64,000 nucleotides of DNA, taken from IMG/VR virus record IMGVR_UViG_3300022744_000020, positions 62,001 to 126,000 of that record; one strand, written 5' to 3'. This document shows, piece after piece, positions 2,861 through 62,336 of the stretch (positions are counted from its first letter, which is position 1; each line of letters starts with the position of its first letter). A program made the translations under genes and the position numbers. Under the pieces are notes generated by a model. The model searched no databases, had not been told where the DNA came from, and saw only the letters and a program-made list of their open reading frames with translations.

Positions 2861-2891
2861 AGAAAAGGGGCTCGTCTCCCCTTTTCTTTTT
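2861..2891 (+). terminator. Rho-independent terminator
   Basis: agaaaagggg-loop-ccccttttct followed by a T run. Confidence 0.7.
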
Positions 2892-2927
2892 ACTAACTAA
2901 AATCCACATTCCAATTATTTTCAGTCA

Positions 2928-2942
2928 CATATAACCAATGTG
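2928..2942 (+). promoter_or_regulatory. early promoter motif
   Basis: CATATAAC-caatg-TG; near-identical to 59425-59439. Confidence 0.7.
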
Positions 2943-3006
2943 AATCGAGTACAAATCGTGTATTCGAGCAACATTTCCCAAACCACTCCTGAGAAAAGGA
3001 TTTGAA

Positions 3007-3111
3007 ATGAAGTCTCTCCTCGTCCACCTCTTCGTCGATCAGTGGGAAAAATGGGTCGGCGCAGTGACCGTCGGCGTCTTCTTCGCTGTTCTCATCGCTC
3101 AAGGAGCTTAA
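3007..3111 (+). CDS. 34-aa hydrophobic micropeptide 1
   Basis: AAGGA RBS; MKSLLVHLFVDQWEKWVGAVTVGVFFAVLIAQGA*. Confidence 0.75.
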   Translation: MKSLLVHLFVDQWEKWVGAVTVGVFFAVLIAQGA

Positions 3112-3113
3112 AA

Positions 3114-3215
3114 ATGAAAGCATTCGACATCACTGTTCAAGCAGCTTGGGTCGTGATTGGCCTGAGTATCGCCGCCAAAGGCGTGCAGATGATCCTGACC
3201 ACTGGCAACAAGTAA
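3114..3215 (+). CDS. 33-aa hydrophobic micropeptide 2
   Basis: AAGGAG RBS; MKAFDITVQAAWVVIGLSIAAKGVQMILTTGNK*. Confidence 0.75.
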   Translation: MKAFDITVQAAWVVIGLSIAAKGVQMILTTGNK

Positions 3216-3225
3216 GGAGCCAAAG

Positions 3226-3324
3226 ATGTTTCGTATTCTCATTGGATGCTTTCTCGTCGCCGTCGGCGCTGGCATCGCTCGTGACGCCCTTGAAGAGATC
3301 GGAGAGCTGATGGAAGACAACTGA
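3226..3324 (+). CDS. 32-aa hydrophobic micropeptide 3
   Basis: TAAGGAG RBS; MFRILIGCFLVAVGAGIARDALEEIGELMEDN*. Confidence 0.75.
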   Translation: MFRILIGCFLVAVGAGIARDALEEIGELMEDN

Positions 3325-3386
3325 CACCCATCTTCCTCTCTTCAACACCCTTCTCTCTTTTCCTACCACACTCCCGGAGCAACACC

Positions 3387-3689
3387 ATGACCCAAGCTGA
3401 AACCAACGCCCAAGCCACCAACGAAACCAACAACGGCACCCCTCCCTTCAACGAAGAACAAGCAAACGCTGCCTATGAGGAAGCCACGCGCAAGACGCGC
3501 GAAGCCGAGGAGAAGGCTGCCGCTGAAGAGGCGGCACGCATCCGCAAGAACCTCCTGATCGCAGCCGGCAGCTTCGCTGCTGGTGCTGCCTCGGCCGTGG
3601 GCGTCGCCTACGCCTGCTGGAAGTTCTTCGGAAGCAAGAGCGGTGACGCTCCTGCCACTGCTGCTCCGACCGACGTCCCGTCGGCTTGA
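3387..3689 (+). CDS. small protein with a charged helix and a C-terminal membrane segment
   Basis: GGAG RBS; EEAARIRK then LLIAAGSFAAGAASAVGVAYACW; biased codons. Confidence 0.8.
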   Translation: MTQAETNAQATNETNNGTPPFNEEQANAAYEEATRKTREAEEKAAAEEAARIRKNLLIAAGSFAAGAASAVGVAYACWKFFGSKSGDAPATAAPTDVPSA

Positions 3690-3694
3690 GCCAT

Positions 3695-3742
3695 GAGCCC
3701 TACGGGGCTCACCAAGAACGGTAACCCCGTTCTTTTTTATTT
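3695..3742 (+). terminator. tandem hairpins ending in a U-tract
   Basis: tgagccc-tacg-gggctca, then aagaacgg-taacc-ccgttctt-ttttatt. Confidence 0.7.
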
Positions 3743-3777: not shown

Positions 3778-4281
3778 GTGCCTGACTTTATGTTTGTCAA
3801 CATCCCACTCGCCAGAGTCACTTCTCCTTCTTCTACTCCTGAAGAAGCACCTCTAGTCAACATCACTGGAGTTATCTACGACAAAGGAAACAGATCTGTT
3901 GGGTGTAAGCTATCCTTCCCACCAATGAAGGACTATCGCAATCAATCCAAAGAATCTTCTCTGGGGGAGATTACCTCAGAGCAAGCAAGTAGGATGATCG
4001 AAAGAGGGCAAGCATTTGTCGAGATGCATCCACCGACCGATGATCGAATCTGCCGTATGGTCACCATTGATGATCGCAATGTTGCTGGTACGATGGAGAA
4101 TTTCAATTTAGAAGGAGACGTACTTATCGGAGATTTCCGACCATTGAACAAGAAAGTCTGCGATTTATTTTCATCCGGCCAAGTAAGTTTTGGCATCCGC
4201 TCTTACCGTGACGAGGACAACAAACCCGTCATTGTTACCTGGGACCTTGTCCCTTCTTCCACCCAACCCAACGAGGCTTAA
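3778..4281 (+). CDS. prohead-protease paralog, probably catalytically altered
   Basis: Blocks collinear with 964..1761: FVEMHPP, RMVTIDDRNVAG, SFGIRSY, IVTWDLV; start uncertain. Confidence 0.7.
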   Translation: MPDFMFVNIPLARVTSPSSTPEEAPLVNITGVIYDKGNRSVGCKLSFPPMKDYRNQSKESSLGEITSEQASRMIERGQAFVEMHPPTDDRICRMVTIDDRNVAGTMENFNLEGDVLIGDFRPLNKKVCDLFSSGQVSFGIRSYRDEDNKPVIVTWDLVPSSTQPNEA

Positions 4282-5982: not shown

Positions 5983-5997
5983 CATATTACTTTTTAG
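5983..5997 (+). promoter_or_regulatory. early promoter motif
   Basis: CATATTAC-ttttt-AG after an AT-rich tract. Confidence 0.6.
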
Positions 5998-6027: not shown

Positions 6028-6714
6028 ATGGCCGACCGCCTCAATCTCAAGAAACCCCTCATCACCCCGAAGATGCTCGTCAATACCTACGAAGCCGTTT
6101 ATTCGGGAGGGGTTAAATACCCCCGTGAAGGAACGCAAGCCATCAGTCTAATCCGTCAGCTCTATGAGCTGTACGTTGGAGTGGTCGAGGTGAGGAATCA
6201 CGAAATTGGAGGGGTGAAGATGAGTACCATCGAAATCCCGATTTCCAAAGCTGCGGGACACTCCAAGCCGTACCTGGAGATGCTAGTTCTCAATATGCAG
6301 CAGTCGGCAAAATGCCCGTTTTTAATTGTTAGCGACGCTGAGATGGTTTGCTTGTCTTGGCACCACACTGATTTCGAAGACGCTTCTCTGTTCCTCTCCA
6401 AGCAACTCAAACGTTTGGATTATGCCAGAGGCATTACCCAGGGAAATCGCCTTTTGATGGACGACCCCCGCGTGCAGGAAAGCGCGGAAAGAATCATTCG
6501 AGTGATCGGCTTCCCGGAAACAATTAAGATATGCTCGAGCAGTTTACTGACAGGCATCTTAATCGTTGAGTTCACCCTCTCACCGGTCAAGAACGTGCAG
6601 CGCAGTGAGTACATGCGCACTAAGGTGCGAGATGCCTTCGATGGCCACTGCAGAGATTTCAGTATTCGGAAGACTCCAGGACTCCCTTCTTTCCGCGTGG
6701 CAATTCATCTCTGA
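6028..6714 (+). CDS. hypothetical protein
   Basis: GGAG RBS, 228 aa; terminator-like hairpin with cttcgg loop and T run at about 6728-6752. Confidence 0.8.
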   Translation: MADRLNLKKPLITPKMLVNTYEAVYSGGVKYPREGTQAISLIRQLYELYVGVVEVRNHEIGGVKMSTIEIPISKAAGHSKPYLEMLVLNMQQSAKCPFLIVSDAEMVCLSWHHTDFEDASLFLSKQLKRLDYARGITQGNRLLMDDPRVQESAERIIRVIGFPETIKICSSSLLTGILIVEFTLSPVKNVQRSEYMRTKVRDAFDGHCRDFSIRKTPGLPSFRVAIHL

Positions 6715-6867
6715 GTCAGAGATGGCGGGGGGCTTCGGCCCTCTATTTTTTGTTGATTCAAAAACTCTAAAAACATACATTATCGATGTAACCAACAGCT
6801 TAAAAAACGAAAACACTGAGGTATTGTTTAATAGAGTATTCCCCACTCGATTCCTGCGGGAGAAATA

Positions 6868-9812: not shown

Positions 9813-9943
9813 CCGAGTTCTGCTCTTTCGAGGGCAGAGAAAGGGACCATCTGGTCCCTTTCTTTTTTATTCGTTCAAATTAAAAACATACATTACAAAT
9901 TGGAGTACCTCCTCATTTCCTGAAACAAAACCGGAATACGAAT

Positions 9944-13878: not shown

Positions 13879-14083
13879 GTCGAATCCTCGTGGAGAAAAA
13901 AGAAAATGATCAACTATTCCGACGCTTTTTGATCGCCGGTAGGCTCGAAACCTTAAACATAATAACTTCTATCCATAAAAAGTTATCACGCTCAGATTAT
14001 AAGGTGGCTCCGTTTCGACGGAAAACAACACACCAGATAAGAAAATTCAGTCCAGAGGGACTGAATGTACTTTATTTTGATGC

Positions 14084-14098
14084 TATATTACCTAGCTG
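14084..14098 (+). promoter_or_regulatory. early promoter matching the phiKZ-type consensus
   Basis: TATATTAC-ctagc-TG. Confidence 0.75.
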
Positions 14099-14132
14099 CA
14101 TTAGACCACAACCGCTGAAAAGGATCCCTGGC

Positions 14133-14870
14133 ATGCTTGAAATCTTAAATCCGCAATCCATTCCCGACATCGATTTCAACGAAAAAGAACTCCAAGAGAT
14201 CGAGACCATCACGGAACTGATGCCGTATCTAAAGAAAGCCCTGGAGTACCTTCATGGGGTTTCGAAGCTTCTCGGGATCAAAGGCTGGTACTGGCCGGAG
14301 AAGTACGATAAATTTCGAGAAGCACTTGGATGCTCATTGAGCCGCATCATTCGAGAGCTCCCGGAGAAAGAACGGGATCTTTCCCTGGTGGAGAGCTTAC
14401 GGCTCGACGGGTTCAAGGTGCAATCCTTTTTGATATTGGAAGACGAACCCACAATGCACCGGGTGATCAGCACCACCCCGCCTTGCCCCTACGCCATTGC
14501 GTATTTTGATCCAAACGAGGTTGAAATCATGAAGAAAGTCAAAGAAAGCATCGCCGAGATCAACCCGAAGGGTGTGGTCCTTCGTACCGAACATCTGATC
14601 CCGCTGCTGGTTCTCGGTGCGGAGTATCTGGAGCGACACAAGGAGGAGCTCGACATCACCGGAATTCCCCCAGACTACATCGATTATCGATTCGCCTTGG
14701 AAGTTTTCTGTACGTTGTATCTGCTGAACCCGGATCATACCCCGAATGAAGTCGAAATGGAGAAGGTCCGGAAGAAAGGATTCACCATCATTCGTTCACA
14801 TCGAGAAGGAAAGGTCGAGTATGCGATCTATCGAAATAGCTTCTGCATTGTGATCTTTCAAGGCTCGTGA
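14133..14870 (+). CDS. hypothetical protein with an internal domain duplication
   Basis: AAGGA RBS and ATG 14133; two related halves; terminator at about 14882-14911. Confidence 0.75.
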   Translation: MLEILNPQSIPDIDFNEKELQEIETITELMPYLKKALEYLHGVSKLLGIKGWYWPEKYDKFREALGCSLSRIIRELPEKERDLSLVESLRLDGFKVQSFLILEDEPTMHRVISTTPPCPYAIAYFDPNEVEIMKKVKESIAEINPKGVVLRTEHLIPLLVLGAEYLERHKEELDITGIPPDYIDYRFALEVFCTLYLLNPDHTPNEVEMEKVRKKGFTIIRSHREGKVEYAIYRNSFCIVIFQGS

Positions 14871-20418: not shown

Positions 20419-20433
20419 TATATTACTTACGTG
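20419..20433 (+). promoter_or_regulatory. early promoter matching the phiKZ-type consensus
   Basis: TATATTAC-ttacg-TG. Confidence 0.75.
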
Positions 20434-20475: not shown

Positions 20476-21252
20476 ATGACCCGTAATTGCATTTTCCCCG
20501 CTACTGCTGAAGACTTCGAGCGTCCCTATTACGGTGGGGTAAAACGAAAGATCTTCACCTTGAAGGAAGCCAACGAATATCTGAAGACTGAACAGCAACT
20601 CATCACTCAAAGCAGCTCTACCTGGGGCGTTCATTTTTACTGCAACGATCATTTGTTTTCGGCTGTTAGAAACAAGGGAGAGGAAACTCTCTGGCTTCTG
20701 CCAGAGTATTTTTGTCCCAGCACCCATCGATTAACCCAAGGTCGGCGTCACGTTGTTCCTCGCGCCGGTCTGGAAGACGGCGTGGTCGATAGCGTGGAAA
20801 AATATGAATTCATTTTCCACCACGATAGCAGACTCCTTACAACTTTAGAAGAGTTGATTCATTTCATCAACGTGGAGCAGCCACGGATGGCCAAAGAGAT
20901 CGCTCTCAAGATGCTGCGAAATAAACCAAAAAGCGTCACCTATCAGGACAACTTCCTTGGTGTTCCGGTCCACCAGATTTTGGCAGATAAAAGGATCCCG
21001 ATTTCAAAGATCGTCGCGGACAAGTCCGGATCTATCTACCGCCTACATGGCTATCGCTACGAGTGCGGCGATGTCTATTGGCACTCACGCGAGATGGTGG
21101 AAGTTGGGCACCAATACTGGCTTCGAGTGACAGCAACGTACGGCTCTCTGAAAAGAAAGAACAAGAACCTCAAACACATCCAGACCCGACTGGACAAGAA
21201 GGCGGAAAAGCATCTGCGCGAAGCCGTCATCGACTACATCGAGAGGAAGTAA
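20476..21252 (+). CDS. hypothetical protein; C-terminal half paralogous to the next gene
   Basis: GAGGT RBS; 258 aa. Confidence 0.8.
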   Translation: MTRNCIFPATAEDFERPYYGGVKRKIFTLKEANEYLKTEQQLITQSSSTWGVHFYCNDHLFSAVRNKGEETLWLLPEYFCPSTHRLTQGRRHVVPRAGLEDGVVDSVEKYEFIFHHDSRLLTTLEELIHFINVEQPRMAKEIALKMLRNKPKSVTYQDNFLGVPVHQILADKRIPISKIVADKSGSIYRLHGYRYECGDVYWHSREMVEVGHQYWLRVTATYGSLKRKNKNLKHIQTRLDKKAEKHLREAVIDYIERK

Positions 21253-22935: not shown

Positions 22936-22987
22936 ATTAAGAACATACATTACCTTAGTGCTTTCAACCAACCATAGAGGTTTTTCG

Positions 22988-31714: not shown

Positions 31715-31771
31715 TGGCTATTTATAAACCTACATTATCGATAGGTAGTCGGGTTGATTTATAAATAGCCA
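31715..31771. repeat. 14-bp perfect inverted repeat enclosing a promoter motif
   Basis: tggctatttataaa (31715-31728) and tttataaatagcca (31758-31771); TACATTAT at 31731. Confidence 0.85.
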
Positions 31772-39560: not shown

Positions 39561-39632
39561 AGTAAAGCCGCCTAATTCCAGCCGGTGTTCTGCTCTTGGT
39601 TCTTCCCAACGCGACAAGAAAGGTCGTTCTCA

Positions 39633-41576
39633 ATGGCTATCAATTCCCCTTCGTTCGCCGGAATCCCTGGTGTCACCGATACCGCGATCGACATGTCGGC
39701 CCCGACCCAAACGGGTGCGGCAAATCCCTTCCCGTCCAGCACGAGCGCTGGCGGCTTTCGAGCCCGCGGCGGCCTGTCCAGCCTGGCTTCGATGGGTCCC
39801 TCGATCTTCCGCAACAGCGGCGACGACGTCACCAATGCGTTCGTCACGCACATGCGTGAAGCGGTCAAGACCACCGACCGTGCTGGTTGGCAGACCCGCG
39901 TGATCCCGATCACGCGTGCTGATCAACCCGACATCGCCTGGAGCGGCATCGCCATCGCAGTGCGCGCCGGCGAACAACCGGACGTGGCCGTGTTCGTGCT
40001 GATCATCGGTGGCAGCGAAGCCGGCCCGGCACCGCGGAGCATTCCGTTCCAAGGTCAGACCTGGCAGATCAAGTACACGCCGGGAGACGCCTGGGATGCG
40101 TCGTACGTCCAAGCCGTCAGCCAACACCTGCAGCGCACGCTGAGTGCAGCCTTCGGCGGCGTGCCGCTGAACGATCCGATCCTGGTCGGCGCGATGGCGG
40201 TTCCGCAGGAAGTTTCGACGGCGGACGTGGACCGGATCAACCAGATCTTGAGCAGCGCGCAGTACGCGGCCGCCCACGCACTGGTCCCGACCGAGCTGGA
40301 AATCGAACCCGGCGATCGCCTGACGTTCGCTCCGCGGTACCGTTGCCCCGAGCTGACCAACGTGGTTGGCATGCCTGTGCTGGCTCCGATCTGTGTGGAC
40401 ACGTCCACCGGCAGCGGTCGTCAGTCCCAGGACCAGACGACGATCAACCGTCAGACGGGCAACCGTCGTCTGGGTGGTGCGGGCGCCTACCTGCAAGCCA
40501 CCTACGTCGGTCGCATCCAGCAGCCGGGCAACTACGGCTTCGCTCCCCAGGTCAACAACCGCGTGTTCGCACCGGAGTTCGTGATCACTGCGGTGGAAAG
40601 CATGGGCGCGGCAACGATGCCGCTGCTGCTGCTGAATGCCTGTGGTTTCCTGAGCGTGTCGTCGAACCTGGCGTGGATGGAAGGCTTCCGACCGGATCCG
40701 AACATCCCTCCGGGCAACGTCGACCATCGTGACGTGGGCATCCTGGGACGAGTGGCCGGCTACGAAGCCGCCAGCAATGGTGGTCGTGGTCAGCGCGCGC
40801 AACTCAAGGGCGCAGGCGTGCAAGATCAGCACATCGGCGAGTTCCTGGAACGCATCTTCCACGACCGTCCGATGATCTCGGTTCGCGTCGAAGAAGCTGG
40901 CCCGATGACCTGGGCACTGGCTCCACTGGTGGAAATCGCATGTGGTGGCCCGGCTGCGGCTGAAGCCAACTCCATGCTGATCCAGCAACTGAACCAGTTC
41001 TGCCGCGGCAAGCTGATGGCTCGTCTGGCCAACGCTGGCGACCAGAACATGCCGATCATGATCGAGAACTGCCCGCGCGTTCACCTGGGGTACTACGTGT
41101 CCTCGGACGGCGTGCGTCACGATCTGGCCAACATCGGTCTGATCGCACTGGCCAACGCCAGTGGCTCCGATGGCTCGCCGACGCTGGTCGAAGCTGACTG
41201 GGTGCGCACGTTCGATCCGCAGTCCGCTCCGGAAGAAGTGCGTCTGCAACAGCGCCTGTCGCTGATCGAGCTGGCCACCCACGGCGTCCAAGTCACGGGC
41301 TACGCACGGGTGCCGACGTTCAACGGTGCGTTCCTCAAGTGCTTCACTGAAGCACTGGTCGACGCCGGCCTGTCGATGCAAGTCGCGGGCAACCAGTCGC
41401 GCATGCGTGCCCAGGAAATGTACGCTCCGGGCTTCTACGCAGCCGCAGCCGTCGGTTCGGTGAACTTCTACACCGCAGCCGATGCCAATGGCCAACACTC
41501 GGGCGCCGGCCGTGCGTTCTTCAACACGGGCTTCAACACCGGGATCGGCCAAGGTCACCCGACCGGCTTCCACTGA
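39633..41576 (+). CDS. chmA: chimallin, phage nucleus shell protein (phiKZ gp54-like)
   Basis: 647 aa, strong codon bias, low-complexity termini, PEFVIT, RVHLGYY and VTGYAR blocks; lies between the gp52-like gene and nvRNAP beta'. Confidence 0.85.
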   Translation: MAINSPSFAGIPGVTDTAIDMSAPTQTGAANPFPSSTSAGGFRARGGLSSLASMGPSIFRNSGDDVTNAFVTHMREAVKTTDRAGWQTRVIPITRADQPDIAWSGIAIAVRAGEQPDVAVFVLIIGGSEAGPAPRSIPFQGQTWQIKYTPGDAWDASYVQAVSQHLQRTLSAAFGGVPLNDPILVGAMAVPQEVSTADVDRINQILSSAQYAAAHALVPTELEIEPGDRLTFAPRYRCPELTNVVGMPVLAPICVDTSTGSGRQSQDQTTINRQTGNRRLGGAGAYLQATYVGRIQQPGNYGFAPQVNNRVFAPEFVITAVESMGAATMPLLLLNACGFLSVSSNLAWMEGFRPDPNIPPGNVDHRDVGILGRVAGYEAASNGGRGQRAQLKGAGVQDQHIGEFLERIFHDRPMISVRVEEAGPMTWALAPLVEIACGGPAAAEANSMLIQQLNQFCRGKLMARLANAGDQNMPIMIENCPRVHLGYYVSSDGVRHDLANIGLIALANASGSDGSPTLVEADWVRTFDPQSAPEEVRLQQRLSLIELATHGVQVTGYARVPTFNGAFLKCFTEALVDAGLSMQVAGNQSRMRAQEMYAPGFYAAAAVGSVNFYTAADANGQHSGAGRAFFNTGFNTGIGQGHPTGFH

Positions 41577-41617
41577 TTGACAACCGCCGGGCTTGCTCGG
41601 CGTAGTCAATGAAAACA

Positions 41618-41664
41618 TTTAAGGCGGCTGGGGAAACCCGGCTGCCTTAAATTTATTTTCTTTT
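41618..41664 (+). terminator. terminator after chimallin
   Basis: tttaaggcggctggg-gaaa-cccggctgccttaaa followed by a T-rich run. Confidence 0.75.
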
Positions 41665-59400: not shown

Positions 59401-59424
59401 ATTTATTCCAGTTTTTTACAAGCA

Positions 59425-59439
59425 TATATAACCAACGTG
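59425..59439 (+). promoter_or_regulatory. early promoter motif
   Basis: TATATAAC-caacg-TG. Confidence 0.7.
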
Positions 59440-59489
59440 AATCGAAGACAATCTCGTCTTGCATGCTTGTAAACCGGAAAGAAATTGGA

Positions 59490-59774
59490 ATGCTTCCATC
59501 AACTTCGTATCCGTACTACGATCGACACGGATTGCCCGTGATCCTGGGTCGTTCTTGGATAGATCAGATCGTAGCAGAAACAGACACCGGAATAGAAGGC
59601 GTTGTCAAATACGTTGATCTGTTCAACATCGTAACTTTCGTACCATTGAAAGGGTCAGTCTATTGGGATGCTCCTCGTTGGATTCGTACCTACAAAGAAC
59701 TTTACCTTCTCCATCGCTTAGCGAAGCAATACGAAGCGGAACAGGCGAGGGCCCTTGCTGAGGAAGACTCCTGA
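59490..59774 (+). CDS. hypothetical protein
   Basis: Behind an early promoter motif; start 59490 or 59463; hairpin at 59789-59812. Confidence 0.65.
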   Translation: MLPSTSYPYYDRHGLPVILGRSWIDQIVAETDTGIEGVVKYVDLFNIVTFVPLKGSVYWDAPRWIRTYKELYLLHRLAKQYEAEQARALAEEDS

Positions 59775-59837: not shown

Positions 59838-62336
59838 TTACGTTATTTCCACATGCTGGTTGTATGTATCCGGCATGAGAATATTCAAAGGACACAGAAC
59901 CGCGTATTCGATGTCTGAGATTCCTGAATACTGCAAGTAGTCGTGGCTAACTAGCCAGACCTGAGAGAACTCTCCTTGGTTAGCCAGTTCTGTAGCCAGA
60001 GCACCAAACTCCTCTCGATGTCCGTTGTCCAGGTTCCTACCTACCTCATCGAGGGTCAGTATGGTATCGCTGAATCCAAGCTCCCTCATCGCCGTAATCT
60101 TGAATGCTAGATTGAAGATTTCTCCCATGCCCTTGGAGCAATGAGAAACGTCATCAATTACGTCCATCTCCGCTCCACGCTCAACAGGGAACATGTAATC
60201 CAACTCAATGTCGTTAGGGTCTGACATTGCGCACGGGCGAATCTTCATCGGATACTTCCAAACTTTCCCGATGAAGTCATTCATTCCATCCAGGAAGTGC
60301 TCAATAAATCCAAAGAGCCCAGCGGCAATCAGTCCTTCGTTGGGAGATATCGCGCGCACGTTGGCTAGCCATGCTTTTTCCTGAAGTTCCAAATCCGCGA
60401 TGTGTTGAGTCAGGGAGGAGATGATCGACTTTTGCTTTTCCGATTGGTGAATGACGGCTTCCTTACTGGCCAAGAGCATTCTTACTTCGCGGATCACGCC
60501 GTTCAGGATCGTCCTTCGAGTGCTTTCCAGCAGATCATCCTGGACCTCGTTAAGACTATCTACGCATTTTTGCAGTTCTACTCTGTGCTTCTCAATTGCA
60601 AGGATCGTTTGCATGGATTGAGAAACCTCATCTTTTCTTCTCTCCAACTTAACCAGCTTGGTAGTGTGTTTCTCAATCTCCGATGTTATTCTTTCCAAAT
60701 CTTCGTAAAGTTCAGCCGTATTCGCAGGAAGTTCGGAGCATGAAAGCTCTTGAAGAATCTTGGACTTCTCTTGACACTCCGCATCCAGTTGGGTAATGGC
60801 GTGCCTGGTCTGTAGGTCTTTTTGTACCGACTCCAGCCTTTCAGAGCAAACCGAAGGGTCTTCAAATAAAAAGCCATCAGCTTTTACGAAATCCCAGTAC
60901 GGGCCAAGCTCAGAGTGGTTTTTAAACAGTCTTGCGACCACCAGATACTTATTGATGTAGTCGGAGCATTCGTCCTGGAAACGCTCATGCTCCTGAATTT
61001 TCTTGGCAATCTCGGACAAAGAAACGACCAGTGAAGACTTGTCCTTTTCGTCCCGCTCCACTTGCTCACGACTGCTGGAGAACTTAAAACTGTACTGGCA
61101 CTCAGGGCAAGTCACGTCAGAAACAGTAGCGTGCTCGGCAGCATGATTAAGTGCATGCTGTATTCTGCCCAGACGATCGTTCAGATCAGTTTGAATCACT
61201 CTCAGTCGGTTCAAGGTTTCTTTGACCTCACCCAGCGAGCGAGAGCCGTATTTACCATTTGGATTAACGGGCAGCTCTTGAAGTGCGAGGAAAACCGAAG
61301 ATTTGATCGCCGAGAAGATGTCGAGAAGGTTCTCTACATTTGCTTGAGAATCTAGCTCAACATCTAAAAGACTGACGCTGAGTTTATTTCTTTCACGAAT
61401 CGCTTCCATCAATCGGTTGGATAATGCGGTTAAGTTATTCTTCTCTATCTTTCTAGCCAGCTCGATTTTAGACTTTATTTTCTCAAGCTCAGTCGAATAG
61501 TTACTGACCGTGGTTTGGCTAATGGCTATTGCCCCGTGCAGTCGAAGCTGTAGTCTCCTGAGGCTTTCCGGCTTGGCGAAATCCGAACCCATTCGACGTT
61601 GCATCAGTCTCAGGTACCTCGATTTCAATTGCTCGAAGGAGGACAGCCTTTGTTGTCTGGTATAGGTGAGCTCTTGAATGGAGGAGTCCACCGGCATGGC
61701 ACGACTGCTCAGCCATTCGTATTCTTTTTTAATCTGGGATACTTCCTGCAGTAGGCGATCGTAATCGTCGAAGCCCAAAATCTTTGAAGTTTCCTGAGTG
61801 AGCTTGATGCGCAGAATCTTCAAAGACCCCTGGGTATCTCTGAGTTTTTCCCTGAACTCGTTGAACAGACGCAGAGCGTAGCTGTAGTTCACGCGATCGA
61901 GTCGCATGAACCATTTCTTTCTTTGTTCTGGTTTAAGCTCAGTGAAATTAACGGATTCAAACAGAAGCTGGTGAACGTCCTGATCAATTCCAAAATGCTC
62001 GAAAACTAAATCTTTCTGACGAACGGAAGTTCCCCAATTGTTCAGCACCTCTCCGTCGACTTCAAAGTAATAGCGAGCGCCTGGCTGAAAGGCCAGCTTC
62101 AACACATAGTCTCGACCATTGTGGTCAAACATCTGTATCTTTCCACCGCATTCTTTGTCGTACCACTTGATGTTTGTTGGAGGATAAGGGGAAACTTCTC
62201 CCAGCAATCTAGATTTTCCGGACCCGTTGGTTCCGAGTACGCACTGATTCTTTTTGCTTGGAGTAATAACGAATTTATTGATAGCGTTGAGATCAAAACG
62301 CTTAAATCCAACGATCTCCATGTGTTTCAGTTTCAT
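59838..62336 (-). CDS. sbcC: SbcC/Rad50-like SMC ATPase (phiKZ gp165-like)
   Basis: Walker A GTNGSGKS, coiled coils, zinc hook CPEC, signature-like CSKG, Walker B LTLDE, VSH. Confidence 0.9.
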   Translation of the reverse strand: MKLKHMEIVGFKRFDLNAINKFVITPSKKNQCVLGTNGSGKSRLLGEVSPYPPTNIKWYDKECGGKIQMFDHNGRDYVLKLAFQPGARYYFEVDGEVLNNWGTSVRQKDLVFEHFGIDQDVHQLLFESVNFTELKPEQRKKWFMRLDRVNYSYALRLFNEFREKLRDTQGSLKILRIKLTQETSKILGFDDYDRLLQEVSQIKKEYEWLSSRAMPVDSSIQELTYTRQQRLSSFEQLKSRYLRLMQRRMGSDFAKPESLRRLQLRLHGAIAISQTTVSNYSTELEKIKSKIELARKIEKNNLTALSNRLMEAIRERNKLSVSLLDVELDSQANVENLLDIFSAIKSSVFLALQELPVNPNGKYGSRSLGEVKETLNRLRVIQTDLNDRLGRIQHALNHAAEHATVSDVTCPECQYSFKFSSSREQVERDEKDKSSLVVSLSEIAKKIQEHERFQDECSDYINKYLVVARLFKNHSELGPYWDFVKADGFLFEDPSVCSERLESVQKDLQTRHAITQLDAECQEKSKILQELSCSELPANTAELYEDLERITSEIEKHTTKLVKLERRKDEVSQSMQTILAIEKHRVELQKCVDSLNEVQDDLLESTRRTILNGVIREVRMLLASKEAVIHQSEKQKSIISSLTQHIADLELQEKAWLANVRAISPNEGLIAAGLFGFIEHFLDGMNDFIGKVWKYPMKIRPCAMSDPNDIELDYMFPVERGAEMDVIDDVSHCSKGMGEIFNLAFKITAMRELGFSDTILTLDEVGRNLDNGHREEFGALATELANQGEFSQVWLVSHDYLQYSGISDIEYAVLCPLNILMPDTYNQHVEIT

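What the first reader, a model, noticed from the sequence alone, without database searches (positions are those of the whole stretch)
2928..3742. Hidden early operon of three 32-34 aa hydrophobic micropeptides plus a membrane-anchored protein
Seen: one promoter motif (2928), then ORFs 3007-3111, 3114-3215 and 3226-3324, each with its own strong RBS (AAGGA, AAGGAG, TAAGGAG), near-equal length, biased codons and one Gly/Ala/Val-rich hydrophobic helix. A 100-aa protein with a similar small-residue TM segment follows, then a double hairpin. The three micro-ORFs are absent from the ORF track. Known: nucleus-forming phages first enclose their DNA in a membrane-bound early infection vesicle. Inference: this is a co-expressed membrane module acting early, in vesicle or membrane remodelling, superinfection exclusion or inhibition of membrane-bound defences. 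It is the strongest candidate here for an undescribed system.
Basis: partly seen in the sequence, partly recalled or inferred. Interest (0 to 1): 0.8.

Follow-up and report, generated by a model that had tools for sequence, protein, structure and literature searches.

The report
Early operon of phage membrane micropeptides
An uncultivated nucleus-forming jumbo phage carries a small, self-contained gene cassette, almost certainly switched on at the start of infection, that encodes three 32-34-residue membrane peptides and a 100-residue membrane-anchored protein; the genes are real and under selection, but they occur only in this phage lineage and their function is unknown.

Summary
ORFs 3007-3111, 3114-3215, 3226-3324 and 3387-3689 each have a Shine-Dalgarno site and one hydrophobic helix rich in small residues. 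They sit between a terminator and a double terminator hairpin. Four other metagenome contigs keep the frames and lengths. dN/dS in the annotated frame is 0.02-0.41, while shifted frames give ratios near or above 1.

They are not "hidden": IMG/ENA already call all four as genes.

The motif at 2909-2942 is the counterpart of the mapped phiKZ early (virion RNA polymerase) promoter. It occurs five times in this 270-kb genome. It also lies upstream of the nuclear-shell gene of Vibrio phage 2 TSL-2019. In all ten copies found it is followed by a 5' hairpin. "Early" is therefore well supported by sequence, though not measured.

The cassette is an insertion between late head genes and it varies. One natural variant has lost ORF2 and ORF3 together. 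ORF1 and ORF4 diverge far faster than their neighbours. An ORF1-like peptide sits in the same genome region in a second phage lineage.

No homologue, domain or structural match was found. The best reading is an early accessory set of single-pass membrane proteins acting on the host envelope. A role in the early-infection vesicle is untested.

The parts
2864..2895 (+). Intrinsic terminator of the upstream gene (2430-2837): GC hairpin plus T-run. It forms the 5' edge of the cassette.
   Evidence: fold -24.6 kcal/mol, z -4.6. The same hairpin-plus-promoter composite is repeated at L008.
2909..2942 (+). Early-class (virion RNA polymerase type) promoter: TTCCAATTATTTTCAGTCACATATAAC, then 6 nt, then G. 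The G at 2942 is the predicted transcription start.
   Evidence: There are five copies in the 270-kb contig and copies in five other IMG/VR contigs of 33-208 kb (three over 140 kb). The block is invariant across relatives although flanking dS is 0.2-1.3. It aligns with the phiKZ P054/P068/P058.1 promoters. It lies before the chimallin gene of Vibrio phage 2 TSL-2019. The start site is inferred, not measured.
2945..2967 (+). 5'-proximal leader hairpin UCGAGUACA-AAUCG-UGUAUUCGA.
   Evidence: All 10 promoter copies carry a hairpin at this position with unrelated sequences.
2987..3000 (+). Small hairpin pairing UCCU with the AGGA of ORF1's Shine-Dalgarno site. It may damp translation.
   Evidence: It is kept in L006, L007, L089/L090 and in the paralogous unit L011. 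Its function is inferred.
3007..3111 (+). ORF1, 34 aa: an amphipathic N-terminal part with conserved W13 and W16 (W13 is also kept in the lineage-2 relative), followed by a C-terminal transmembrane helix with small residues at positions 23, 27 and 31. It is hypervariable.
   Evidence: dS is 1.32 and dN 0.40, against a background dS of 0.19-0.46. It is kept in all five related contigs. An ORF1-like 32-aa gene sits in the same genome region in a second lineage.
3114..3215 (+). ORF2, 33 aa: moderately hydrophobic helix interrupted by Lys22. Its SD lies inside ORF1's last codons, so translation is probably coupled.
   Evidence: dN/dS about 0.1. It is deleted together with ORF3 in L089/L090.
3226..3324 (+). 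ORF3, 32 aa: N-terminal transmembrane helix plus an acidic C-terminal tail (RDALEEIGELMEDN). It is the most constrained of the four.
   Evidence: dN/dS 0.02-0.05, with 9-14 synonymous changes per pair.
3325..3386 (+). Unstructured C/U-rich spacer ending in ORF4's GGAG. It is variable in sequence and length among relatives.
   Evidence: fold -1.2 kcal/mol.
3387..3689 (+). ORF4, 100 aa: polar N-terminus, a charged helix, a Gly/Ala-zipper transmembrane helix (about residues 55-80) ending in WKFFG, and a short Pro/Ala tail. It is fast-evolving with indels.
   Evidence: dN 0.24. The AlphaFold2 model has low confidence and shows one helix over residues 23-81. The 67-aa protein at L011:6427-6630 has a similar transmembrane helix and tail and sits under the same promoter.
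3694..3742 (+). Double hairpin; the second hairpin plus a T-run is an intrinsic terminator. It forms the 3' edge of the cassette.
   Evidence: -24.4 kcal/mol, z -4.8. It is conserved in all relatives.
59405..59774 (+). Second copy of the same promoter in the window (core 59406-59432), with its own leader hairpin and a 94-aa gene (59490-59774). It is bracketed by terminators.

Best explanation
This is an accessory cassette in an uncultivated chimallivirus from a freshwater metagenome, built as terminator, promoter, genes, terminator. It is inserted between late head genes.

**Expression (inferred).** The injected virion RNA polymerase probably reads it from an early promoter of the phiKZ type. 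The mRNA would start near G2942 with a protective 5' hairpin. ORF1, ORF2 and ORF3 are likely translated in a coupled chain, and ORF4 from its own SD.

**Products (shown from sequence, localisation inferred).** All four are single-pass helical proteins whose transmembrane helices carry small-xxx-small packing motifs. They would insert into the host cytoplasmic membrane within minutes of infection. They could equally insert into membrane derived from it.

**Action (inferred).** They would bind each other or host envelope proteins helix to helix. The most likely purpose is an early host-interaction task such as blocking entry of competing phages or neutralising a membrane-bound host function.

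**Organisation (shown).** ORF1 and ORF4 are the constant, fast-evolving core. ORF2 and ORF3 are a conserved but dispensable pair.

**Shown:** coding status, selection, cassette architecture, promoter class by sequence, variability.
**Inferred:** timing, membrane insertion, target.
For: **The genes are real.** dN/dS is 0.13-0.41 for ORF1, about 0.1 for ORF2 in the two informative comparisons, and 0.02-0.05 for ORF3. Shifted frames give ratios of 0.6-3.5, mostly above 1. Frames and lengths are kept in L006, L007, L089 and L090.

**The genome is a chimallivirus.** It encodes chimallin, split RNA polymerase subunits and an S80 protease.

**The promoter is of the early class.**
- The architecture TTTCAG-N4-(C/T)ATAT(A/T)AC-N6-G matches phiKZ P054, P068 and P058.1.
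- The literature describes the phiKZ early motif as an extended -10 box plus a T-rich tract upstream of -19, and PHIKZ054 uses it (PMC8244752). The start lies 6 nt downstream of the element (PMC5312081).
- The same motif lies about 80 nt upstream of the nuclear shell gene of Vibrio phage 2 TSL-2019.
- Five copies per genome compares with the six to eight early promoters found in 201phi2-1, all of them before hypothetical proteins (PMC11512511).

**Leader.** A 5' hairpin follows all 10 promoter copies.

**Membrane character.** Hydropathy windows and small-residue spacing support it.

**Accessory, arms-race-like behaviour.**
- ORF2 and ORF3 are deleted together in a natural variant.
- ORF1 and ORF4 have dN of 0.40 and 0.24, against 0.006-0.067 for neighbours.
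- The region between protease and tail sheath differs between relatives.

**Shared promoter class.** About seven of some twenty genes that a simple ORF scan listed downstream of these promoters also encode small hydrophobic or membrane-anchored proteins.
Against: - There is no expression data. The two 'RNA' wastewater libraries hold the whole region including the late protease, at depths like the DNA libraries, so they prove nothing.
- No transcription start was measured.
- No transmembrane predictor or localisation data were available. ORF2's helix is only moderately hydrophobic and contains a lysine.
- No target is known. No homologue was found in Pfam, PHROGs, NCBIfam, PADLOC, PDB or the ESM Atlas.
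- This phage's own chimallin gene (39585-41576) has no recognisable copy of the motif upstream. This phage's early class may therefore be more varied than the motif suggests.
- Fast divergence of ORF1 and ORF4 could reflect weak constraint and allele swapping rather than an arms race.
Confidence: 0.5

Rival explanations
1. Lysis-timing module. ORF4 and/or the micropeptides act as a holin, antiholin or membrane depolariser that sets the time of lysis.
For: Small single-pass proteins with Gly/Ala-rich helices are typical of hole-forming lysis proteins (general knowledge). ORF4's size of 100 aa is in the holin range. The paralogue L011 gives a very weak hit to a PHROG named 'hol-like chemotaxis' (E 0.29).
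Against: No endolysin or spanin is nearby; the neighbours are head protease-type genes. The promoter is of the early class, not the late class. There are no hits to any holin family at E<=0.1. Each protein has one transmembrane helix only. ORF2 and ORF3 can be lost.
Confidence: 0.1
2. One reading: the proteins are phage-encoded components of the early-infection vesicle membrane. They would stabilise it, export mRNA, or help hand the genome over to the phage nucleus.
For: The promoter is early-class and the products look membrane-anchored. The vesicle derives from the host inner membrane, and translation is reported to be localised around it (PMC13282480; 10.1101/2024.03.24.586471). ORF4 has a long charged cytoplasmic helix that could tether a partner.
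Against: A core vesicle function should be conserved across chimalliviruses. These genes occur only in one or two uncultivated lineages. ORF2 and ORF3 are dispensable in nature. The vesicle forms at injection, before any new protein is made. The papers searched describe no phage-encoded transmembrane protein in it.
Confidence: 0.1
3. Toxic small hydrophobic peptides of the type I toxin kind, or a toxin/antidote pair formed by ORF2 and ORF3. They would shut down host membrane energetics or act as a selfish module.
For: The size and hydrophobicity resemble type I toxins. The nearest named ESM Atlas clusters are small membrane proteins including DinQ, PmrR and MgtS, but the scores of 0.55-0.62 are at chance level. 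ORF2 and ORF3 are gained or lost as a pair, and ORF2 looks recently exchanged (dS 0.04 against a background of 0.2-0.45).
Against: No antisense promoter or RNA is detectable and there is no Rfam hit. ORF3 carries a strongly acidic tail, unlike known type I toxins. Depolarising the host early would harm a phage with a long cycle.
Confidence: 0.08
4. The micro-ORFs are only regulatory upstream ORFs that tune ORF4 translation, or they are chance ORFs.
For: The spacing is tight: 2 nt and 10 nt between ORFs. SD sites are embedded in the preceding ORF, and the SD of ORF1 is sequestered in a hairpin.
Against: There is amino-acid-level purifying selection, with many synonymous and few replacement changes. 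ORF1 keeps its peptide pattern despite 38% nucleotide divergence. ORF4 remains intact and has its own SD when ORF2 and ORF3 are deleted. An ORF1-like gene stands without ORF4 in lineage 2.
Confidence: 0.04

Closest known systems
phiKZ-family early (virion RNA polymerase) promoters, for example phiKZ P054, P068 and P058.1
   Same: They share a T-rich tract, then TTT(C/G)AG, 3-4 nt, (C/T)ATAT(A/T)AC, 6 nt, then G. There are few copies per genome, they precede small hypothetical genes, and in a Vibrio relative one precedes chimallin.
   Different: The box reads CATATAAC rather than TATATTAC. An extra conserved TTCCA lies further upstream. A hairpin follows in all 10 copies found. Activity and start site are not measured here.
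PeSL cassettes of T4-like phages (composite terminator/early-promoter repeats flanking variable genes) and lambdoid 'morons'
   Same: A terminator hairpin plus a conserved early promoter is repeated around the genome. It brackets small orphan genes inside a variable region between conserved late genes. Indels and allele swaps occur at or near the repeats (PMC4122927).
   Different: The phage family and the polymerase are different. Recombination at the repeats is inferred from mosaic divergence and from metagenome contigs that join the leader to other genes. It was not demonstrated.
Small single-pass membrane regulators and toxins of bacteria and phages (MgtS, PmrR, AcrZ and KdpF types; type I toxins; small T-even early membrane proteins)
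   Same: They are 30-50 aa with one helix, and they act by helix-helix binding in the inner membrane (general knowledge). The ESM Atlas places ORF2 and ORF3 nearest to such clusters, at chance-level scores.
   Different: There is no sequence relationship. Here three such genes are arrayed in tandem with a fourth membrane protein under a phage early promoter.
C-tail-anchored inner-membrane proteins ElaB/YqjD/YgaM (about 100 aa)
   Same: ORF4 has the same layout and size: a helical charged cytoplasmic part followed by one C-terminal transmembrane helix (the comparison is from memory).
   Different: Pfam gives no hit at E<=1 other than a chance match. ORF4 also has a 20-residue tail after the helix.

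Membership tests
Chimalliviridae (genome context) | Encodes chimallin, split multisubunit RNA polymerases and a phiKZ-type S80 prohead protease | tested here: met
   Pfam Chimallin_Phikzvirus scores 47.9 bits against a cut-off of 27 at 39585-41576. RNA polymerase beta-subunit PHROGs and Peptidase_S80 are present.
phiKZ-type early promoter | Extended -10-like box (TATATTAC type) with a T-rich tract upstream of -19 | tested here: met
   Window 2913-2935 reads AATTATTTTCAGTCACATATAAC. phiKZ reads AATTTCAGATTTATATTAC and AATTTGAGAT(C/T)TATATTAC.
phiKZ-type early promoter | Transcription starts 6 nt downstream of the box, early, and independently of new protein synthesis | not testable with these tools
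   A G lies 6 nt downstream (2942) in 9 of 10 copies. No 5'-end or time-course data exist for this uncultivated phage, and one search is uninformative.
phiKZ-type early promoter | Stands in front of known early genes | tested here: inconclusive
   It precedes the nuclear shell gene in Vibrio phage 2 TSL-2019. It was not recognised upstream of this phage's own chimallin gene.
PeSL / moron-like mobile cassette | Repeated terminator-promoter composite flanking variable, non-core genes, with indels at its borders | tested here: met
   There are five copies. The L008 and L010 copies share both terminator and promoter. The ORF2-ORF3 indel and the ORF1/ORF4 allele divergence fit. Loose ends join the leader to other sequence.
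Holin / lysis cassette | Match to a holin family, an adjacent endolysin or spanin, and late expression | tested here: not met
   There is no holin hit in Pfam or PHROGs. The neighbours are head-protease-type genes. The promoter is early-class.
Type I toxin-antitoxin | Small hydrophobic toxin with an overlapping antisense RNA | tested here: inconclusive
   No antisense promoter of note and no Rfam family were found. Toxicity was not tested.
F0F1 ATP synthase assembly protein I (the IMG name for the ORF4 orthologues) | Match to the AtpI family model | tested here: not met
   IMG gives this name to P0012 and P0013. Pfam and NCBIfam give no such hit at E<=1.
ElaB/YqjD (DUF883) tail-anchored proteins | Match to the family model | tested here: not met
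   There is no Pfam hit. Only the architecture is alike.

The most novel reading that the evidence does not exclude
The cassette encodes phage-made membrane components that are inserted into the early-infection vesicle or the adjoining inner membrane, from ribosomes gathered around it. ORF4 would use its charged cytoplasmic helix as a tether, and the micropeptides would be helix-packing partners. These would be the first phage-encoded integral membrane proteins of that compartment. In this lineage they would help protect the genome or hand it over to the nucleus.
Probability: 0.1. Interest if true: 0.85.

Novelty: new member of a known kind. Interest (0 to 1): 0.42.

Why it matters
A recent review lists the function of the many small uncharacterised genes of jumbo phages as an open question (PMC13282480). 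This locus is a clean example. It holds four selected, membrane-type microproteins under a promoter that can be assigned to the early class by sequence alone.

A by-product may be more useful than the genes themselves. The phiKZ early-promoter architecture, followed by a 5' hairpin, is recognisable across distant and uncultivated chimalliviruses. That allows early genes to be picked out of metagenomic jumbo-phage genomes without any transcriptomics.

If the products act at the host membrane early in infection, they are candidates for superinfection exclusion or for countering membrane-bound defences.

Tried and rejected
**Searches that found nothing**
- DNA search of the locus against 50,697 phage genomes.
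- tblastn of each of the four proteins against the same set, with E up to 10 for ORF1-3 and up to 1 for ORF4.
- Pfam, PHROGs, NCBIfam and PADLOC.
- PDB sequence search, which gave only chance hits at E>0.3.
- ESM Atlas, with best scores of 0.71-0.80, at chance level.
- Rfam, with nothing near a gathering score.

**Searches that found only the lineage itself**
- The search for homologous proteins cannot take peptides under 40 aa.
- For ORF4, the 163-aa neighbour and the L011 paralogue it found only this lineage.
- The metagenome scan with ORF4 returned only the source contig.
- An exhaustive profile search with the ORF1 family found only three real clusters and one spurious repeat protein.

**Expression evidence.** Laying 'RNA' wastewater runs on the region gave coverage of late genes too, at depths like the DNA runs. 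It is not evidence of transcription.

**Promoter pattern.** The 16-nt core pattern in IMG/VR gave mostly chance hits; only L066 was related.

**Other checks**
- A sigma-70 reading of the motif (TTCCAA-15 nt-TATAAC) was considered and set aside. The spacer is short, the scan tool does not call it, and phiKZ-type phages do not depend on the host polymerase.
- The AlphaFold2 model of ORF4 is of low confidence (pLDDT 59) and was not used for fold search.
- The small ORFs next to phiKZ early promoters are not hydrophobic, so phiKZ offers no direct precedent.

Full report
**Source.** The window is positions 62,001-126,000 of IMG/VR contig IMGVR_UViG_3300022744_000020 (270,383 bp), with a 100% match over 10,278 bp. 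The contig comes from a freshwater metagenome.
- The genome is a nucleus-forming jumbo phage. It has a chimallin gene at 39585-41576 (Pfam Chimallin_Phikzvirus, 47.9 bits).
- It also has several split RNA polymerase beta-type subunits, a phiKZ-type tail sheath, a terminase and a Peptidase_S80 prohead protease at 904-1761.
- The closest isolates are Ralstonia phages FLC1-1B and RP12 and Burkholderia phage FLC9. They share only 44-47% protease identity.

**Observation.**
- The ORFs lie at 3007-3111 (34 aa), 3114-3215 (33 aa), 3226-3324 (32 aa) and 3387-3689 (100 aa).
- Each has a Shine-Dalgarno site 6-8 nt upstream of its ATG.
- The SD of ORF2 lies inside the last codons of ORF1, and the SD of ORF3 spans the stop codon of ORF2. 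Translation is therefore probably coupled.
- This overlap also explains why ORF1 always ends in IAQG(A/V) when ORF2 or its SD remnant follows, but not in the second lineage, where ORF2 is absent.
- Each product has one hydrophobic segment with small residues spaced four apart. In ORF1 these are positions 23, 27 and 31. In ORF4 a long Gly/Ala zipper ends in WKFFG.
- The unit is bracketed by an upstream intrinsic terminator (2864-2885 plus T-run) and a downstream double hairpin with T-run (3694-3742). Both fold far better than shuffles.
- A scan for SD-preceded hydrophobic micro-ORFs outside long ORFs finds only these three, plus one weak hit, in 64 kb. It finds no tandem array in about 400 kb from 20 distant relatives.

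**The ORFs are not hidden.** All four exact sequences are already gene calls in the IMG/ENA protein collection.

**Are they genes?** Exact-sequence cluster look-up and ORF4 homologues led to four independent contigs:
- L006 (JGI 3300048691), which carries the whole neighbourhood from the protease onward.
- L007 (Logan ERR13176177).
- L089 and L090 (two JGI samples).

Frames, lengths and SD sites are kept in all of them.

| ORF | dN/dS in annotated frame | Note |
|---|---|---|
| ORF1 | 0.13-0.41 | synonymous sites near saturation |
| ORF2 | about 0.1 | in the two informative comparisons |
| ORF3 | 0.02-0.05 | 9-14 synonymous against 1-3 replacement changes |

The two shifted frames give pN/pS of 0.6-3.5, mostly above 1. 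The micro-ORFs are therefore protein-coding and under purifying selection. Readings as pure regulatory upstream ORFs or as chance ORFs are disfavoured.

**Promoter.** The block around 2909-2967 is invariant among relatives, although flanking genes have dS of 0.2-1.3.
- A relaxed pattern finds five copies in this genome, at about 64.9, 121.4, 134.1, 200.1 and 224.8 kb of the contig, all on the same strand.
- It also finds single copies in five other IMG/VR contigs of 33-208 kb.
- The consensus is TTCCAnaTtTTTtCAGTCAcATATAAC, then 4 nt, then GTG-A.
- A short blastn of the motif against isolated phages hit intergenic DNA of several chimalliviruses. In Vibrio phage 2 TSL-2019 it lies about 80 nt upstream of the annotated nuclear shell protein gene. 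It also occurs in a Seoulvirus and in Burkholderia phage SURPRISE13.
- I then read the phiKZ sequence itself. The promoters upstream of PHIKZ054 (chimallin), PHIKZ068 (a non-virion polymerase subunit) and PHIKZ058.1 read AATTT(C/G)AGAT(T/C)TATATTAC, then 6 nt, then G.
- That is the same architecture as ATTTTCAGTCACATATAAC-CAATGT-G in the window.

The published work agrees.
- The phiKZ early motif is an extended -10 box with a T-rich tract upstream of -19, and PHIKZ054 uses it (PMC8244752).
- Early promoters of phiKZ-related phages are extended, AT-rich and highly conserved, with the start 6 nt downstream (PMC5312081).
- 201phi2-1 has only six to eight of them, all before hypothetical proteins (PMC11512511).

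I therefore accept 'early' as the most likely timing, at about 0.8. Two caveats apply: no start site or time course exists for this phage, and I saw no copy upstream of its own chimallin gene.

**Leader.** All ten promoter copies are followed, 4-8 nt after GTGA, by a hairpin. The hairpin sequence differs from copy to copy. Nine of ten have a negative z-score against shuffles. This points to a structural requirement, most simply a 5' stem-loop on the mRNA. A second small hairpin pairs UCCU with the AGGA of ORF1's SD. It is kept in relatives and in the paralogous unit at L011.

**Cassette behaviour.**
- The unit lies between the head protease and a 163-aa protein that itself weakly matches a head-protease PHROG (E 1e-7). 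It is thus an early unit set among late genes.
- The stretch from protease to tail sheath differs in gene content between relatives.
- In L089 and L090 a clean deletion runs from ORF2's SD to the last four codons of ORF3. It leaves ORF1 (34 aa) directly followed by ORF4 (102 aa). The remnant of ORF3's end shows that this is a loss, and that ORF2 and ORF3 go together.

Divergence between the window and L006 is very uneven:

| Gene(s) | dS | dN |
|---|---|---|
| Neighbouring genes | 0.19-0.46 | 0.006-0.067 |
| ORF1 | 1.32 | 0.40 |
| ORF4 | 0.73 | 0.24 (plus indels) |
| ORF2 | 0.04 | 0.013 |

This mosaic implies allele exchange inside the operon.

- Metagenome contigs that match the promoter and leader and then continue into other sequence point the same way (loose ends at 2944-2967 and 3011).
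- The L008 copy shares both the terminator hairpin and the promoter with the finding's copy.
- In these respects the element behaves like the composite terminator/early-promoter PeSL cassettes of T4-like phages (PMC4122927) and like morons.

**Breadth.**
- ORF4 has four orthologues among 5.8 billion proteins.
- A 67-aa protein at L011, under another copy of the promoter, shares the transmembrane helix and tail pattern. It is a singleton.
- An exhaustive profile search with the ORF1 family found only two clusters from this lineage and one 32-aa protein, MNSFLNHQPKRWEVLLIVVVFGLIGVIIGLGF.
- That protein occurs on 11 contigs of a second lineage (230-kb contig; protease 48% identical). There it lies about 5 kb downstream of the protease, as the last gene of a unit driven by the same promoter.
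- ORF1-type peptides are therefore the most widely kept element. The three-gene array is confined to the window's own lineage.

**Function.** No family, structure or language-model search gave a usable lead. IMG's name for ORF4 orthologues, 'ATP synthase assembly protein I', is not supported by any model. The AlphaFold2 model of ORF4 has low confidence and shows a single helix over residues 23-81.

What can be said rests on anatomy: early promoter, four single-pass small-residue helices, a dispensable conserved pair, a fast-evolving core, and several other genes under the same promoter class that also encode small membrane-anchored proteins. I commit to early insertion into the host inner membrane and helix-helix interference with a host or competitor function, with modest confidence.

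These genes are lineage-restricted and partly dispensable. The vesicle forms before new proteins are made. The papers I searched describe no phage-encoded transmembrane component. Lysis control, a toxin-type role and a purely regulatory role are weaker rivals for the reasons given under each.

**Verdict.** This is a real, selected, probably early-expressed cassette of orphan membrane microproteins. It is a new member of a known kind, namely phage accessory small membrane proteins in a mobile promoter-terminator cassette. The most reusable result is that the phiKZ early-promoter architecture plus a 5' hairpin can be recognised in distant uncultivated chimalliviruses.

Noticed in passing
window 59405-59774: A second copy of the same promoter and leader hairpin sits between two terminators and drives a 94-aa, apparently soluble orphan protein (59490-59774). 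Three further copies lie elsewhere in the contig (L011:6337, L116:1768, L008:6201).
   Followed up: partly
window 5983, 14084, 20419 (+ strand): Further early-promoter-like boxes ((C/T)ATATTAC, 6 nt, then G) were found. The one at 5983 has a T-rich tract and lies just upstream of gene 6028-6714. The one at 20419 lies upstream of gene 20476-21252. The one at 14084 lies inside the long ORF 13890-14870, whose true start may be later.
   Followed up: no
window 6768-6782, 9881-9895, 22938-22952, 31723-31737: A second repeated upstream motif, TAAAAACATACATTA, lies after T-rich terminator tails. It may mark another promoter class (middle or late).
   Followed up: no
window 3790-4281: The 163-aa protein just downstream of the cassette weakly matches a head-maturation-protease PHROG (phrog_7478, E 1e-7). 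It may be a diverged protease paralogue or a head protein near the true S80 protease.
   Followed up: no
window 39585-41618: The chimallin gene sits in an unusually GC-rich segment (61.5% against about 50%). It is shadowed by a 662-aa antisense ORF that is probably an artefact of composition. A 13-nt repeat CTGGCTGAAAGGC occurs twice upstream (39370, 39476) and again at 62081.
   Followed up: no
window 2888-3061 (read laying bins): Depth spikes 5-10 fold in all four metagenome runs over the promoter and leader. Loose ends continue into at least five different downstream sequences. The cassette is therefore multi-copy and joined to varied genes in related phages.
   Followed up: partly
L089:443-904 and L090:936-1397: This natural variant lacks ORF2 and ORF3. 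The junction keeps ORF2's SD and the last 13 nt of ORF3, and ORF1 now ends in IAQGV.
   Followed up: yes
L109:5203-14665: In the second lineage the same variable region after the protease holds collagen-repeat and GDSL-lipase proteins, an OmpA-domain protein and a DUF1353 protein. This gene content is quite different from the window's.
   Followed up: no
P0012, P0013 (ORF4 orthologues): IMG names these proteins 'F0F1-type ATP synthase assembly protein I'. No Pfam or NCBIfam model supports the name, so it looks like a spurious transfer from a hydrophobic match.
   Followed up: yes
L117:3526-3622 (+): Another operon under the same promoter type, in a different contig, also ends with a 31-aa ORF with a hydrophobic C-terminus (MEIQLKHKSGRTMWVPLSLLKVHLAVGWVVI). 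It has no evident homology to ORF1.
   Followed up: no
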